Positions 43,202-48,060 of a stretch of DNA of 64,000 nt are shown one piece after another. The notes below the pieces were generated by a model. That model made no database searches, had not been told where the DNA came from, and saw only the letters and a list, made by a program, of their open reading frames with translations. The position numbers and the translations under genes are program-made. Source of the stretch: Fonticula alba ATCC 38817 (lineage: Eukaryota; Protista; Nucleariida); NCBI GenBank assembly GCA_000388065.2, contig KB932202.1; one strand, 5' to 3'. Position 1 is the first letter of the stretch. Each line of letters opens with the position of its first letter.

Positions 43202-43996
43202 ATGAAGCCCACCAAGGTGGCGAAGCCCAGCGACAAGTCCGCTGCAAAGGCCAAGAAGGCTGCCCCGCCTGCTGGTAAGGACGCCAAGATTGACGGGTTC
43301 TTGGATGACATCTTCAAGAGCGTCTCCTCCAAGGCCAAGCCTCAGGCAACAGCGCAGCCCACCCCCGGCACGAATGATCTCGATGCCTTCCTCGATGCTG
43401 AGGACCCCGAGGAGGGCGTCGAGCTGACCGATGCCGAGAAGAAGGCCAAGAAGATGCTGATCGCTCGGAGTCTTTCTAGGATCTCCTCCGGGACAAAGGA
43501 AAGCGCGGAGACCTTGCTGAAGAAGGCCACCGGGAGTAAGACCGACAAGACCGGTCCTGATGACGATGGGTTTGCCGACAGTCGCGGTAGCCGTCAGCAA
43601 GGTGCGTTTGTGTGGGTGTGGGTGGGTGTGTCCGTGTGTGTGTGTCACTCTTTTGGAGGGCTGACAACCATGGCCAGGCCATTCTGCAATGGTGGTAGGC
43701 TAACATCTCGCTGTGGCTCACTTCTCACCCTTTCTCCTCGATCCCCTCGGCGATGTACACACACGCACACATGCATACATATAGGACGTTCCTTCACCGA
43801 GGATGGCTATCCGATTTACACTCCCGACGAGCTTGGCCTCGGCAAGGGCGGTGGTACGCTCGCATGACATACTTCGCGTCATTTATTGCGCAATGCAGAG
43901 CACCCATACGCCGACACACACATACACACACCGCCCACTGACCGGTTGAACCCAGACACCGAGGACTGTCCGATCGACTGCGATTGCTGCTTCTAG
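43202..43996 (+). CDS. DUF1764-family eukaryotic protein (3 exons)
   Basis: Exons 43202-43601, 43785-43853, 43956-43996 give a Lys-rich protein with LDDIF, DDDGFADSRG, FTEDGYPIYTPDELGLGKGGDTEDCPIDCDCCF*, the characteristic DUF1764 C-terminus. Confidence 0.85.
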
Positions 43997-44271
43997 GCCA
44001 CTTCCGGGTGGCCAACTGTCTCGCGCTTCCAGGGACCCACAAACTTGCCAGCCAGCACAAACACACCACAACAGAACAAACAATACCCTCTACAGGTGAC
44101 ATGGCATGTTGGATTGGGCATGTGGTAAAGCCACCGCTGACGCTCCTGGCCCGGTTATCGTGGCACAGGATCGCCCGAAGCACACCATGCCCAATGGTGC
44201 ATGAGAGGAGCGGGGGGGGGGGGGGGGAACAAGGAAACGGACAAGTAGGCGGGTGGGGGATGGAGGGTGCT

Positions 44272-46188
44272 CTAGACATCAGCTGGATTGCCCAAGACAC
44301 TGGTCCGCCAGCGCCAGCCCCCGATGTGCAAAGACCGCATGAGGATTTGCCGTCGCCGATGAACATGTCCACGGGACATGCTGGCCTCGATGTATGCGCT
44401 GTCCAGCAGGCGGAAGCCACGAGCACGGAGGAGCTCCAAGTCCACGGTTGGCATTGGTGGCTTCTCGGGGGAATATCGAACAAAGTGCCCGTCAATCATG
44501 GTGTCGAGCAGCATGTCCAGGGCCCGGTACAGGCGAACCAGATTGGCACGACTGACTGGCAGTCGTGTGGGCCGGCGGTATCGCGGGTCGGCTGTGGCAT
44601 TGTCCGGCTTCTGATTCGGCATGCCCGGAGGTCCGACCGGTGGTGGCGCATAGGAGCCGGCGTGTGCGCCGGGCAGTGGCGGCGGTGGGGCCGGGTACCA
44701 CCGGTCGCCGCTGCCAGTCGCCAAGTCCGGATAGAGGGGACGTGTGTGCCCGGCAAACCGGGGGTCCGGCGAATGGACGGCCGGAGATTCGTGTCCTCTG
44801 GGGTGGTATGGCTGGTGTTGAGGATGTGGCATTCCACCAGGGGGCCCTTCGTGGCGTGGATGGGGCGGAAGGCGGCTCCCAGCCAGGTCGTCATGGCCTC
44901 CGGGGCTGGTCCACTGGTGGGAGGTATCCCAGGGGACGCTATCCTCCGGCCGCGAGGGCGGCTGCTGGGAGTGGCCATACTCCTGCGGCGGTGCCCCGTA
45001 TCCTGGAGGTGGTGGGCGAATAGAGAGACTGGAGGTGCTTGGGCCAACAAGTCCCGATGGACTGGGATCAATGTGGCCACCATAGCCGGATGCCAGGGGC
45101 GCTGGCGGCGCAGGATACCCCGGCATCGGGGTGGGATAGCTGTAGTGGCCCGGTGCCGCGACGTGGCCCGGCTGTCCCGGAACCGGCTGGTGGCCAACAA
45201 CATAGCCTGACCCTGAGGAGGGCAGCCCGCCGGGGTAGCTCGATCCTGAAGGGGGCTGTTGCTCGGGGTATGGGCCACTGGCTCGGAAGCCCGGGGAGCC
45301 GCGCAAGCGCGGCGGGATGCTGGCCCCCATCAGGGGGAATGCCCCGGACCATGCCAGAGTCCGGGCCACGGCGATGGGCATGCCCGTTTGGTTCATGAGA
45401 AACTCGGACATGGCGGCCTCGGCGCTGTCCTCGATGTCGATGACATTCTCCAGGAGGACGACCGCCTCGTGGAAGACGGCGATCATGGCCAGGGCACTGC
45501 GGGACTTGTGGTAGGAAAAGAGGCCAAAGGAGAAGAGGCTGGACTTGACATAGGGGGCCAGAGCAGCGGCATCGTAGGCCACGGCCTGGGTTAGTTCGTT
45601 GAGCCCGACGCGGTCCCAGCGACCCCCGTCCCAATAAAGATCCAGAATGTCCAGTGGCCACTTGCCGACGACCGCGATGCGCGTGGCCAGATTGGCGCAA
45701 CTGTGGAAGGCGTCCAGCGCGCTACGGGTGTAGGAGACGGCCAGGGAGGAGAAGAGGATCCCATTGAAGGCCACGATGACCGTCAGCACCCGGAATCCGT
45801 CGGTATCCACCTGGACATCACCGAGGCCGACTGTGGTGAAGACGTAGCCCACATAGTAGGCGGTGGTGATGATGCTGACCGGGTCGCCGGTGCTGCTGTT
45901 TCGAACCACATTGTCGAGGGAGAAGAAAACGAAGGTCCAGCTGAGCCAGAGCAGGGCCGACCAGACAATCAGAATCAACATCAATAGGAAGGGCGCAATG
46001 ACGGACAGCCCGCGTCGGCCAAAGAGGTCGGGCAGCCTGGAGGCCATCCACACGCGCGACAATGAGGACCAAAGTAGCAACAGTAGATAGCCCACCACTG
46101 CGGGCCGGGTGTTGGATAGAACCGTCAGGACGATGTCGACATTGACCACGACCACCATGATGGCCCCGAGGATGCCCAGCCAGAGCAT
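44272..46188 (-). CDS. Prokaryotic-type potassium-channel-family protein (Ion_trans_2 pore) with a large low-complexity insertion; intronless, ~638 aa
   Basis: ATG at 46188 (MLWLGILG) to stop at 44272. Hydrophobic helices flank a pore helix and filter (AYYVGYVFTTVGLGD), followed by an inner helix (FRVLTVIVAFNGILFSSLAVSY). The upstream ORF-track extension is only a (GAA)n repeat. Confidence 0.8.
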   Translation of the reverse strand: MLWLGILGAIMVVVVNVDIVLTVLSNTRPAVVGYLLLLLWSSLSRVWMASRLPDLFGRRGLSVIAPFLLMLILIVWSALLWLSWTFVFFSLDNVVRNSSTGDPVSIITTAYYVGYVFTTVGLGDVQVDTDGFRVLTVIVAFNGILFSSLAVSYTRSALDAFHSCANLATRIAVVGKWPLDILDLYWDGGRWDRVGLNELTQAVAYDAAALAPYVKSSLFSFGLFSYHKSRSALAMIAVFHEAVVLLENVIDIEDSAEAAMSEFLMNQTGMPIAVARTLAWSGAFPLMGASIPPRLRGSPGFRASGPYPEQQPPSGSSYPGGLPSSGSGYVVGHQPVPGQPGHVAAPGHYSYPTPMPGYPAPPAPLASGYGGHIDPSPSGLVGPSTSSLSIRPPPPGYGAPPQEYGHSQQPPSRPEDSVPWDTSHQWTSPGGHDDLAGSRLPPHPRHEGPPGGMPHPQHQPYHPRGHESPAVHSPDPRFAGHTRPLYPDLATGSGDRWYPAPPPPLPGAHAGSYAPPPVGPPGMPNQKPDNATADPRYRRPTRLPVSRANLVRLYRALDMLLDTMIDGHFVRYSPEKPPMPTVDLELLRARGFRLLDSAYIEASMSRGHVHRRRQILMRSLHIGGWRWRTSVLGNPADV

Positions 46189-46281
46189 GGTTGTGGTCTG
46201 CTTCGGTTGCTGCGATGAGTTGTCCGTCCTTTGGGCCTTCTTCTCCTCCTCCCCCCTCGCCTCCCTGTGGTTTGTGTTTCT

Positions 46282-46340
46282 CTTCTTCTTCTTCTTCTTC
46301 TTCTTCTTCTTCTTCTTCTTCTTCTTCTTCTTCTTCTTCT
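46282..46340. repeat. (CTT)n/(GAA)n trinucleotide microsatellite, ~19 copies
   Basis: Perfect tandem repeat ~95 nt upstream of the channel ATG. Confidence 0.9.
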
Positions 46341-48060
46341 TTCCTGATGCCTTCGTGCAACGAAGGGGATGGGCCTGGCGGACACCAAGGGGAGACAAAC
46401 GCCTACGAGCACCGGGCCAAAGCCATCACGCGATGAACAATCTCGCGGGAGGGCTGGTGCCGACCGAGTGCACGGCAGGAGGAGGCGACAGGCGAGCGGG
46501 GAGGCGAATGAGCACAAGGGGGCAACGTGAGGGCGACGCAAGGCCTTTATAGGGGGGGGGGGAGTGAGAAGGGGAGGTGGCGAGTTGCTTCGATTGCTCT
46601 CTAGGGGCATGCATGGTTTTCATTTTGAGAGGCATTTTCATGCGGGCATCAGGAGCAGGGGGCACATTGGTAGGAGAGGCATGTGCCCGCGTGCGGAGAG
46701 GCACGAAAGGGAAGGGCAATCAAACCCGTGGTGCAATTGTGGGTCAACTTGGCCTGCGCGGCCCGACCCCCGGGATGATTAAGGGTGAAGGGTGTGTCCT
46801 CCCGATCACCACCAGGCACACCGAGTCCAAGGGCGGGGAATTTGGCCCAGGAAACAGGCGCGGCATGGGAAAAGGACCTGCGCCGGTTTCCCTGGGGACC
46901 GCCCTCGCCCCCCCCCGCACAAGGCACGATAGTCTCTGGCTTATCTCGCGGAAAGAGTGCTCTCGTCGGTTAAGGGCCTGCGGTTCTGGATGTGTCACCC
47001 GGTGGCCTGATCAGAGTTCGAATAGTATTACAGATCGGGTGATCCGGCCCGGAACCATAAGTTGGCAATTCGCTCGGGGCCGAAAAACCATTGGGCTGGG
47101 GAGCTTCATCGGCCCAGGGTGGGGGAGGAACCCGTATTGGGTGCTTGGGCAGCATGCCGCTGCTCTCTCTCTCATTTCATGGCAGCACATGAACCCAGCA
47201 ACAAAGGGGCCTTTAAATATTTGACTCAACATATGCGTATTGGCTGTGACCCGTGGCCGGAGAGGCTGGCCTCCTGGGGTGGACTTTGGCTGTTTGTGTG
47301 TGTTTCTTCCGCGATCTTTTCAATCGCGCAGACGGCGGGGGAGGGGCGGGATGCGGAAGAACGCATGTATGTGGAGTACATGGCTGTCTTGGGCACGCTG
47401 TCGGATGGCAAGGGATGTGCCTGCCCTGTGTGCGTTGTGGTCGCCAGTTCTCCCAGCTCTGGCCTAGTTTCTTTTTTTTTTTTCAAGAGATCCCTCCACC
47501 GCCTGGAGCGACTGTGGAGGCTAGGCGCCGGAGAGGCCCCGGTCCCCTTCCTGGCGGCATGCGGGGGGCCAGTTCTCCCGCCCAGAGAGGGTCGAGATCC
47601 GATGGGCGCCAGGCGTCATGCTCGGTCGGTGCTGGGGGGCGGGGGGGATGCGCAGCCCCCCGCAGTAGGGCACTAGAACGGGGGGAGTGCGGGCGACAGG
47701 GGCGCTGCTCCGGCCTCATGGGAGGCGGGGGGGGGGGANNNNNNNNNNNNNNNNNNNNNNNNNNNNNNNNNNNNNNNNNNNNNNNNNNNNNNNNNNNNNN
47801 NNNNNNNNNNCGGAAGAGAGCTCTGGTGGGCTTGGGCACTGGGGGGGGGTGTGTGTGTGGGGGGGGGGGGGAGGAGGGGGCAGACGGGCCGCTGGGGGAT
47901 GTGACGCCACCGGCTGGCCTCCCGGGGGTCATACTGTTGGGTGTGCCGTGGTGCGGTCTATAAGAAAAACCGGCCCCCTCGCCCTTCCATCGGAGCTCTC
48001 TCTCTCTAATCGCAGTTTGATATTTTTTTGTCGCTGTGAATAGTTTCCGTGTTCTTCAAA

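What the first reader, a model, noticed from the sequence alone, without database searches (positions are those of the whole stretch)
44560..45420. ~285-aa Pro/Gly/Tyr/His-rich insertion in the channel tail carrying LYPDL and PPxY trafficking motifs
Seen in sequence: between the folded segment ending ...ENVIDIEDS and the resumption at RRPTRLP...LDMLLDTM lies an in-frame, stop-free, disordered stretch without the C/T tracts that mark introns here. It contains RPLYPDLA (44722-44736) and RPPPPGYG (~44998-45015), plus many GY/SY/PY repeats. Established: LYPxL is the ALIX/Bro1-binding late-domain motif (EIAV p9 uses LYPDL), PPxY binds WW domains of Nedd4/Rsp5 ligases, and P/G/Y-rich tails bind ALG-2 or phase-separate. 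Inference: a eukaryotic ubiquitin/ESCRT control module was grafted into a prokaryotic channel, which could route it to endosomes, phagosomes or extracellular vesicles. I know of no described example of this combination.
Basis: partly seen in the sequence, partly recalled or inferred. Interest (0 to 1): 0.7.

Follow-up and report, generated by a model that had tools for sequence, protein, structure and literature searches.

The report
Disordered proline-rich loop in Fonticula channel
A bacterial-type potassium-channel-like protein of the amoeba Fonticula alba carries a unique 282-residue floppy, proline-rich loop in its cytosolic domain. The two "trafficking motifs" seen in the loop cannot be told apart from chance, so this is a real but fairly ordinary lineage-specific insertion.

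Summary
The minus-strand ORF 44272-46188 encodes a 638-aa Ion_trans_2 channel protein of Fonticula alba. Residues 256-537 (window 44578-45423) are an in-frame, stop-free P/G/S/A/H/Y-rich insertion. PPGY sits at 44998-45009 and LYPDL at 44722-44736.

A profile built from 129 relatives matches the protein in two pieces, on either side of exactly this stretch. None of about 156 relatives or 51 bacterial loci has more than 11 extra residues anywhere. In the closest relative the site is an 8-residue loop between two helices. AlphaFold gives pLDDT below 50 for residues 285-516.

The functional reading is not established:
- PPxY occurs in 52-60% of composition-preserving shuffles.
- Strict LYPxL is rare (0.66%), but only about 0.12 after correction for an 18-motif panel.
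- ALG-2 motifs are absent.
- No donor of the insert was found, and no orthologue carries it, so motif conservation cannot be tested.

The family is not purely prokaryotic. The Fonticula gene groups with chytrid and blastoclad fungal homologues.

Control of ion channels through PY motifs and Nedd4 is textbook biology.

The scan had noted this same gene twice before as a horizontal-transfer candidate, on this same stretch and not on other DNA.

The parts
44272..46188 (-). Complete single-exon coding sequence (638 aa plus stop at 44272-44274) of the Fonticula alba channel-like protein
   Evidence: ORF list and translation. The NCBI gene model on GCA_000388065.2 KB932202.1 is the same 638-aa single exon. 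Relatives start at the same Met.
45709..46188 (-). Membrane part, residues 1-160: N-terminal helix, slide-like helix, M1, pore helix, filter and M2
   Evidence: Pfam Ion_trans_2 at residues 79-158, 40.1 bits against a cut-off of 22.5. AlphaFold helices 2-24, 31-49, 54-88, 106-119 and 130-174 with pLDDT above 90. KirBac3.1 Z 9.2, rmsd 2.9, 103 residues aligned over residues 26-160.
45817..45837 (-). Selectivity-filter signature TTVGLGD, residues 118-124
   Evidence: Read directly from the translation. T119, L120, G121, G123 and D124 are nearly invariant columns in the family.
45424..45708 (-). First half of the helical cytosolic domain, residues 161-255, ending in ENVIDIEDS
   Evidence: Family profile positions up to about 254. 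AlphaFold helices 178-185, 193-216 and 232-248.
44578..45423 (-). The insertion, residues 256-537 (282 aa)
   Evidence: It lies in the gap between the two profile matches and between the two BLASTP blocks against the closest relative. It is absent from all relatives.
45337..45423 (-). Head of the insertion, residues 256-284. It is not proline-rich, is Ala/Met/Leu-rich, and is predicted as two short helices.
   Evidence: AlphaFold helices 255-268 and 272-280 with pLDDT about 70-79. This may be inflated because MAFFT mis-placed a helix of the relatives here.
44578..45336 (-). Disordered P/G/S/H/Y-rich core of the insertion, residues 285-537
   Evidence: pLDDT is below 50 for 285-516. Composition. 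There is no structural or feature relative in the ESM Atlas.
44998..45009 (-). PPGY, residues 394-397 (PY-type motif)
   Evidence: Regex on the translation. It lies in a pLDDT<50 region. It is expected by chance in 52-60% of shuffles.
44722..44736 (-). LYPDL, residues 485-489. It fits both the LYPxL type and the YxxPhi type.
   Evidence: Regex. It lies in a pLDDT<50 region. Strict LYPxL occurs in 0.65-0.66% of shuffles.
45223..45237 (-). YPGGL, residues 318-322 (a second, loose YPXnL match)
   Evidence: Regex. Two or more loose matches occur in 10% of shuffles.
44749..44928 (-). His/Pro-rich sub-stretch of the insertion, residues 421-480 (9 His, 13 Pro)
   Evidence: Sub-region composition.
44275..44577 (-). 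Second half of the helical cytosolic domain, residues 538-638
   Evidence: Profile positions 251-331 match residues 545-630 (26-32 bits). BLASTP to P0002 residues 256-347. AlphaFold helices 547-566, 584-589, 597-604, 607-622 and 627-632 with pLDDT 72-94.

Best explanation
This is a real, translated, lineage-specific, intrinsically disordered insertion. The host protein is a tetrameric pore-loop cation channel, probably K+-conducting. It has a TTVGLGD filter and a KirBac/NaK-like pore. It belongs to an uncharacterised family of about 335 aa, with a helical cytosolic domain, that is found in many bacteria and in early-diverging Holomycota. In Fonticula alba, a short surface loop between two helices of that cytosolic domain has grown to 282 residues. 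The growth is low-complexity P/G/S/A/H/Y sequence of the kind a 65% G+C genome readily produces. The two halves of the domain still match the family profile, so the loop is tolerated and the domain presumably still folds around it. Four such loops would hang from each tetramer on the cytosolic side. Shown: the insertion, its boundaries, its uniqueness, its predicted disorder and the intact flanking domain. Inferred: that it is translated, that it faces the cytosol, and that it arose in place. Most likely it is a largely neutral flexible spacer. At most it offers generic docking sites for proline-recognition domains. The single PPGY and the LYPDL are candidate sorting signals, not demonstrated ones, and they appear at a frequency compatible with chance.
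For: Two-piece profile match flanking residues 256/260-537/544. BLASTP blocks 2-248 and 545-631 against the closest relative, P0002, whose own gap is 7 residues. Relatives have a median length of 337 and a maximum of 411 aa, and their largest internal insertion anywhere is 11 residues. The site spans a median of 23 and a maximum of 25 residues. 51 bacterial loci give contiguous matches of about 310 aa. In the AlphaFold model of P0002 (pLDDT 88.8) the site is loop 250-257 between helices 232-249 and 258-277. The model of the Fonticula protein has pLDDT below 50 for residues 285-516 and confident flanks. There are zero stops in frame against 2-9 in the other frames, with P=0.016. There is no consensus splice donor and no in-frame intron candidate in residues 240-550. 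The deposited gene model is a single exon. No repeats, no donor in the window, and no Pfam or Atlas relative of the insert were found. PPxY is at chance, LYPxL is not significant after correction, and ALG-2 motifs are absent.
Against: An exact LYPDL is nominally rare for this composition (0.66% of shuffles), and both motifs lie in the predicted disordered, presumably cytosolic part, as functional short motifs do. GC3 of the insert (0.70) is lower than that of the N-terminal part (0.82). This fits relaxed constraint but would also fit sequence that is not always translated. The claim that such inserts are a general habit of this genome rests only on unchecked notes of this scan and was not tested here.
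Confidence: 0.6

Rival explanations
1. One reading: the insert is a working sorting module. PPGY would recruit a Nedd4/Rsp5-type HECT ligase through its WW domains. LYPDL would recruit ALIX/Bro1 (or, read as YxxPhi, an AP complex). The channel would then be ubiquitinated, endocytosed and sorted into multivesicular bodies or vesicles.
For: Both motifs exist at the stated places. They lie in the pLDDT<50 region, on the side of the membrane expected to be cytosolic (pore fold). Strict LYPxL occurs in only 0.66% of shuffles. Four copies per tetramer would give avidity (inference). PY/Nedd4-2 control of channels and YPXnL/ALIX sorting of receptors are established mechanisms (abstracts of PMC12796476, PMC2824488, PMC7463639 and PMC3341166). 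Cytosolic Lys residues are available at 176, 215, 228, 527 and 576.
Against: PPxY is expected by chance (0.52-0.60). Any late-domain motif occurs in 74% of shuffles. LYPxL is about 0.12 after correction for 18 motif classes. Most regex matches to short motifs in disordered regions are non-functional (general knowledge). There is only one PY motif and no cluster. No orthologue exists to test conservation. The fungal and P0002 relatives carry no such motifs in a comparable tail. The presence of ALIX and Nedd4 in Fonticula was not checked here.
Confidence: 0.2
2. The low-complexity loop has some other role. The His/Pro-rich part (residues 421-480) could be a metal or pH sensor. The loop could be a tether or condensate-forming region. 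It could be a generic docking platform for SH3, GYF or profilin-type proline readers that modulate gating through the cytosolic domain.
For: There are 16 His, 9 of them within 60 residues. There are two PPPP runs, two PPG[hydrophobic] matches (0.056 of shuffles) and one class I SH3-type match. The loop enters a domain that presumably couples to the gate through the long M2 extension, helix 130-174.
Against: No motif is enriched beyond chance after correction. No relative has anything comparable. There is no fold or family hit. This explanation is purely compositional.
Confidence: 0.13
3. The stretch, or an in-frame part of it, is not in the mature protein. It would be an unrecognised intron or 'exitron', or a gene-model artefact.
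For: No reads could be laid. The gene sits in an intron-rich locus (neighbouring gene models with introns). GC3 is lower in the insert than in the N-terminal part. Removing it would restore the family's usual length.
Against: The stretch is in frame and stop-free (0 against 2-9 stops; P=0.016). Only one loose GTRNG donor and no strict donor occur in residues 240-550, and no in-frame donor/branch/acceptor combination was found. There are no C/T or CA tracts like those in the two neighbouring introns seen at 43601-43784 and after 43854. The deposited annotation keeps it.
Confidence: 0.07

Closest known systems
Uncharacterised 'potassium channel family protein' family of about 335 aa (e.g. Georgenia halotolerans MDD9207696.1; Spizellomyces punctatus SPPG_03395 / XP_016609636.1; Paraphysoderma sedebokerense KAI9142727.1)
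   Same: The architecture is the same from end to end: N-terminal helix, M1-P-M2 pore with a T-x-G-x-G-D filter, and a helical cytosolic domain ending in the PPxP ... RR ... GWxW signature. The profile match is 192 bits in two pieces. The Atlas shape match of the closest relative to the bacterial clusters gives TM 0.81/0.92.
   Different: Only the Fonticula protein has the 282-residue loop. Identity to any relative is at most about 30%. The HLAYPVLHYFH motif of the bacterial members is degenerate in the Fonticula protein and P0002.
KirBac3.1 / NaK / Kir6.2 pores (PDB 1xl4, 2q67, 6c3o)
   Same: The pore fold includes a slide-like helix before M1. Z is 9.2-9.3, rmsd 2.9-3.1 and 103 residues align for KirBac3.1. 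Z is about 8 for NaK, Kir6.2 and Slo2.2.
   Different: The cytosolic domain is all-helical, not the beta-rich Kir domain, and has no clear solved counterpart (best generic helical matches have Z of 7.8 or less). There is an extra N-terminal hydrophobic helix.
PY-motif ion channels controlled by Nedd4-2 (ENaC and others)
   Same: A [LP]PxY motif lies in a cytosolic, disordered part of a channel subunit. The principle is established in the literature (abstracts of PMC12796476, PMC2824488 and PMC7463639).
   Different: Here there is a single motif at chance frequency, inside a loop rather than a terminal tail. Its conservation cannot be assessed and no binding data exist.
YPXnL / LYPxL ligands of ALIX (EIAV p9 LYPDL from general knowledge; PAR1 and P2Y1 YPX3L, PMC3341166 and PMC4907476)
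   Same: The pentapeptide is identical to the EIAV late domain, and it sits in a membrane protein's cytosolic disordered region.
   Different: No evidence of binding or sorting exists. The significance is only nominal. The same peptide also fits the YxxPhi consensus.

Membership tests
Pore-loop tetrameric cation channels (Pfam Ion_trans_2, PF07885) | Profile match above the curated threshold | tested here: met
   40.1 bits against a cut-off of 22.5, E 3.3e-10, residues 79-158.
Pore-loop tetrameric cation channels (Pfam Ion_trans_2, PF07885) | Selectivity-filter signature T-x-G-[YFL]-G-D after a pore helix | tested here: met
   TTVGLGD at residues 118-124, preceded by predicted helix 106-119. 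It has Leu in place of Tyr/Phe, so ion selectivity is not established.
Pore-loop tetrameric cation channels (Pfam Ion_trans_2, PF07885) | M1-P-M2 fold | tested here: met
   KirBac3.1 Z 9.2, rmsd 2.9, 103 residues aligned. NaK Z 8.2. The same result was obtained for the closest relative.
The ~335-aa bacterial/Holomycota 'potassium channel family protein' family | Both the membrane part and the C-terminal helical domain match a family profile | tested here: met
   Profile 3-254 matches residues 2-259 (165 bits) and profile 251-331 matches residues 545-630 (26 bits).
The ~335-aa bacterial/Holomycota 'potassium channel family protein' family | Compact length, with a short loop at profile positions about 250-256 | tested here: not met
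   There are 282 extra residues at that point. Relatives have 23-25 residues across match states 240-262. This is the feature that makes the Fonticula protein a variant.
PY-motif substrates of Nedd4/Rsp5 ligases | [LP]PxY in an accessible cytosolic region | tested here: met
   PPGY at residues 394-397, pLDDT below 50. However, one or more such motifs occur in 60% of shuffles.
PY-motif substrates of Nedd4/Rsp5 ligases | Motif conserved among orthologues | tested here: inconclusive
   No orthologue with the insert exists in 1.84 billion representatives, in the word-index searches or in two metagenome scans.
PY-motif substrates of Nedd4/Rsp5 ligases | Binding to WW domains and ligase-dependent ubiquitination or turnover | not testable with these tools
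   This needs pull-downs and mutant analysis.
ALIX/Bro1 ligands (LYPxnL late-domain type) | LYPxnL in an accessible cytosolic region, more often than composition predicts | tested here: inconclusive
   LYPDL at residues 485-489, pLDDT below 50. Strict motif p is 0.0066, about 0.12 after correction for 18 motif classes. For the loose YPXn[LI] pattern, 2 matches were observed, p 0.10.
ALIX/Bro1 ligands (LYPxnL late-domain type) | Binding to the V domain of the organism's ALIX/Bro1 protein | not testable with these tools
   The presence of ALIX in Fonticula was also not checked here.
ALG-2-binding Pro/Gly/Tyr-rich regions | ABM-1 (PPYPxnYP) or ABM-2 (PxPGF-type) motif | tested here: not met
   Neither pattern is present in the insert. 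The patterns were written from my own knowledge of the consensus.
Spliceosomal intron (as the rival reading of the stretch) | GT donor with local consensus, a branch site and a YAG acceptor, with a length that keeps the frame | tested here: not met
   One loose GTRNG, no GTRCGY or GTRAGT, and no in-frame candidate in residues 240-550. The local consensus was taken from only two neighbouring introns.

The most novel reading that the evidence does not exclude
In the Fonticula lineage, a bacterial-type channel shared with zoosporic fungi acquired short sorting signals (PPGY, LYPDL) that evolved from scratch inside a newly grown disordered loop. This would place an otherwise 'prokaryote-style' channel under Nedd4/ESCRT-ALIX control. 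It would be a clean natural example of how imported or ancient membrane proteins get wired into eukaryotic trafficking.
Probability: 0.15. Interest if true: 0.5.

Novelty: new variant of a known kind. Interest (0 to 1): 0.3.

Why it matters
If the motifs worked, this would show that eukaryotic quality-control and trafficking signals can arise de novo in a disordered loop of a bacterial-type channel. It would also give a handle on an uncharacterised channel family shared by bacteria, chytrids, blastoclads and Fonticula. As things stand, the main value is corrective. The insertion is real and precisely bounded. The motif argument is statistically weak. The gene is not an isolated bacterial import, because it has fungal relatives. 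Long disordered insertions in conserved domains are common in eukaryotic proteins, and PY-motif control of channels is well known. A specialist would therefore be only mildly surprised.

Tried and rejected
Retention in mRNA is therefore untested.

2. Word-index protein searches, with the whole protein and with residues 1-275, returned only the protein itself. The exhaustive search was needed.

3. MAFFT alignments A1 and A3 placed the relatives' post-loop helix on residues 258-280 of the insert. I rejected this as an artefact after the profile tests. It may have inflated the AlphaFold helices at 255-280.

4. A plain hmmalign run did not split the Fonticula protein correctly, so I used it only for the relatives.

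5. I looked for a donor or repeat origin of the insert with TRF, a direct-repeat search, and blastn/tblastn against the window. Nothing was found. The ESM Atlas search on residues 281-540 gave no usable hit, with all TM scores below 0.3.

6. NCBIfam gave no hit.

It was redone with 8 rows.

8. Two metagenome scans for close relatives found none.

9. The careful tree did not finish in two 300-second runs, so only the quick IQ-TREE with SH-aLRT support is reported.

10. A crude attempt to measure how common Pro-rich stretches are in coding ORFs of this window was uninformative, because exons are short. I make no claim from it.

11. Paper searches for Fonticula low-complexity or proline-rich inserts, and for this channel family in chytrids, found nothing relevant.

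I therefore do not claim that its fold is new.
Full report
WHAT IS THERE. The stretch lies inside one long ORF on the minus strand, 44272-46188, which encodes 638 aa. Pfam recognises an Ion_trans_2 pore at residues 79-158 (40.1 bits against a cut-off of 22.5). NCBIfam gives no hit. The exact protein is on record once, on scaffold KB932202.1 of assembly GCA_000388065.2, as a single-exon 638-aa gene. Its neighbours are an acidic ribosomal protein gene and an intron-bearing DUF1764 gene. Notes of this scan on the same genome name the organism as Fonticula alba, an amoeboid opisthokont of the Rotosphaerida.

- ENVIDIEDS is residues 247-255.
- RRPTRLP is residues 538-544.
- The stretch between them is 282 residues (44578-45423): P 64, G 38, S 29, A 25, H 16, Y 14.
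- PPGY is residues 394-397 (44998-45009).
- LYPDL is residues 485-489 (44722-44736).

BOUNDARIES AND UNIQUENESS. Word-index searches found only the protein itself. An exhaustive phmmer search with residues 1-275 against 1.84 billion representatives gave 918 relatives. The best is only 29% identical (P0002, 382 aa), and nearly all are 325-360 aa long. Their median length is 337 and the maximum is 411.

A profile built from 129 of these relatives, without the Fonticula protein, matches it in two pieces. Profile 3-254 matches residues 2-259 (165 bits), and profile 251-331 matches residues 545-630 (26 bits). Taken alone, fragment 535-585 fits profile 251-288 (9.8 bits), while fragment 250-300 does not fit that part at all. 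BLASTP against P0002 gives blocks 2-248/3-248 and 545-631/256-347. A 7-residue gap in P0002 therefore corresponds to about 296 residues in the Fonticula protein. MAFFT alignments put the relatives' next helix on residues 258-280, and the profile tests show that this placement is an artefact.

Among about 156 relatives, the largest internal insertion anywhere is 11 residues. The insertion site spans a median of 23 and a maximum of 25 residues. 51 loci in bacterial genomes all give contiguous matches of about 310 aa. These genomes include Nocardioides, Georgenia, Blastococcus, Modestobacter, Kineococcus, cyanobacteria, Thermoanaerobaculia, Jiella, Caulobacteraceae and Bradymonadales. The refuting condition 'bacterial homologues already contain an equivalent insert' is therefore not met.

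IS IT TRANSLATED? The indirect evidence favours translation:
- The deposited model keeps the stretch.
- The stretch is in frame with conserved sequence on both sides.
- It has 0 stops over 282 codons, where the other five frames have 2-9. Sequences simulated with the same dinucleotide make-up are stop-free only 1.6% of the time.
- Residues 240-550 contain one loose GTRNG, no strict donor of the kind seen in the two neighbouring introns, and no in-frame donor/branch/acceptor combination.
- There is no tandem repeat, dispersed repeat or similar DNA elsewhere in the window.

GC3 is 0.70 in the insert against 0.82 in the N-terminal part. This fits younger or less constrained coding sequence.

STRUCTURE. 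AlphaFold with 128 aligned sequences gives confident helices for the membrane part and for both halves of the cytosolic domain. It gives pLDDT below 50 for residues 285-516. Residues 255-280 come out as two short helices at pLDDT about 70-79, possibly helped by the mis-alignment. The closest relative, P0002, folds with mean pLDDT 88.8. There the site is an 8-residue loop (250-257) between helices 232-249 and 258-277. The insertion therefore sits in a short inter-helix loop of the cytosolic domain.

The pore resembles KirBac3.1 (Z 9.2-9.3, rmsd about 3, 103 residues, including a slide-like helix), as well as NaK, Kir6.2 and Slo2.2. Foldseek gave only weak pore matches. The helical cytosolic domain has only generic helical matches. 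I did not fold it alone, so I make no claim that its fold is new. By shape, P0002 matches bacterial 'potassium channel family protein' clusters over its whole length (TM 0.81/0.92). The insert itself has no relative by features or by shape in the ESM Atlas.

By analogy with all pore-loop channels, the end of M2 and everything after it face the cytosol. This is an inference.

WHO HAS THE FAMILY. The family is mainly bacterial. In a quick IQ-TREE of 134 N-terminal parts, the Fonticula protein pairs with P0002 (SH-aLRT 99). The pair sits in a 12-row group (SH-aLRT 96). That group contains proteins of Spizellomyces punctatus and S. 'palustris' (chytrids) and of Paraphysoderma sedebokerense (a blastoclad). 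P0002 lies on a metagenomic contig whose V-ATPase gene is split into exon-like pieces. Another member of the group lies beside F-box, Brr6-like and DUF6699 genes. Only five of the 12 lineages are shown to be eukaryotic, both Fonticula-side branches are long, and the careful tree did not finish, so this placement is provisional. It does argue against a recent private import from bacteria, which two first-stage notes on this same gene had proposed. None of the eukaryotic relatives has the insert or comparable motifs.

MOTIFS AGAINST CHANCE. I shuffled the 282 residues and counted motif matches:
- PPxY or [LP]PxY appears in 52-60% of shuffles.
- A loose YPXnL appears in 35% of shuffles.
- Two or more YPXn[LI] matches appear in 10% of shuffles.
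- At least one late-domain motif appears in 74% of shuffles.
- Strict LYPxL appears in only 0.65-0.66% of shuffles.

Against a modest panel of 18 trafficking and adaptor motifs, the LYPxL figure corrects to about 0.12. The real look-elsewhere factor is larger still, because a reader was scanning whole genomes for anything notable. YPDL also fits the YxxPhi endocytic consensus. Both motifs lie in the predicted disordered part, which is necessary for function but not sufficient. The protein has only five Lys. Conservation, the usual discriminator, cannot be applied, because no closer relative exists in any collection searched.

MECHANISM AND RIVALS. My best reading (0.6) is a locally grown, largely neutral disordered loop, tolerated at a surface loop of the cytosolic domain of a working channel. 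In this reading PPGY and LYPDL are incidental or, at most, unproven docking sites.

It uses established mechanisms. Nedd4 WW domains bind L/PPxY, and NEDD4-2 regulates many ion channels (abstracts of PMC2824488, PMC12796476 and PMC7463639). ALIX binds YPXnL in PAR1 and P2Y1 (PMC3341166 and PMC4907476). For the same reason, the combination of a channel with a PY motif is not new in principle.

Other roles for the His/Pro-rich low-complexity sequence (0.13) and removal of the stretch from the mRNA (0.07) are the remaining rivals.

VERDICT. The functional half is neither supported nor refuted, and it is statistically weak. The protein is a new variant (a unique 282-residue loop) of a known kind of protein. 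Interest is about 0.3.

No spliced model had to be joined.

Noticed in passing
window 44272-46188 (minus strand); proteins P0116, P0156, P0102, P0157: The channel gene groups (SH-aLRT 96, quick tree) with homologues from the chytrids Spizellomyces punctatus and S. 'palustris', the blastoclad Paraphysoderma sedebokerense, and a soil contig with fungal-type neighbours. The family therefore looks old in Holomycota rather than a recent bacterial import into Fonticula.
   Followed up: partly
L001:5598-6746 (bioreactor metagenome scaffold, ENA ERZ28594394): The closest relative (P0002, 29% identity, 382 aa, no insert) lies on a 52.7% G+C contig. A V-ATPase gene on that contig is split into four exon-like pieces, so the contig comes from an unidentified eukaryote.
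   Followed up: partly
window 46281-46341: A perfect (TCT)20 microsatellite, (AGA)n on the gene's strand, lies 93-153 nt upstream of the start codon. In the upstream in-frame ORF it would read as a poly-Lys run. Homologues show that the true start is the Met at 46188.
   Followed up: partly
window 44212-44227: A G16 homopolymer run on the plus strand lies about 45 nt beyond the stop codon, in the presumed 3' UTR. The channel gene and the convergent DUF1764 gene (43203-43996, plus strand) end about 275 nt apart.
   Followed up: no
window 45337-45423 (residues 256-284): The first 29 residues of the insertion are not proline-rich. They are Ala/Met/Leu-rich and are predicted as two short helices. 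It is unclear whether this is a real structured element or an effect of a mis-aligned MSA.
   Followed up: partly
window 44275-46188 (whole protein): The 638-aa protein has only five Lys (residues 176, 215, 228, 527, 576) and one Cys (residue 164). This is an extreme composition for a protein with a large cytosolic part.
   Followed up: no
window about 47700-47830 and elsewhere: The window holds 3172 N in all, which are assembly gaps. One run is visible as X runs in ORFs around 47.7-47.8 kb, about 1.3 kb upstream of the channel gene.
   Followed up: no
P0002 residues 161-347 and window residues 161-255 plus 538-638: The all-helical cytosolic domain of this channel family has no clear solved structural counterpart. 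The best matches are generic helical proteins with Z of 7.8 or less. The family is uncharacterised although it is widespread in Actinomycetota, cyanobacteria and Acidobacteriota.
   Followed up: partly
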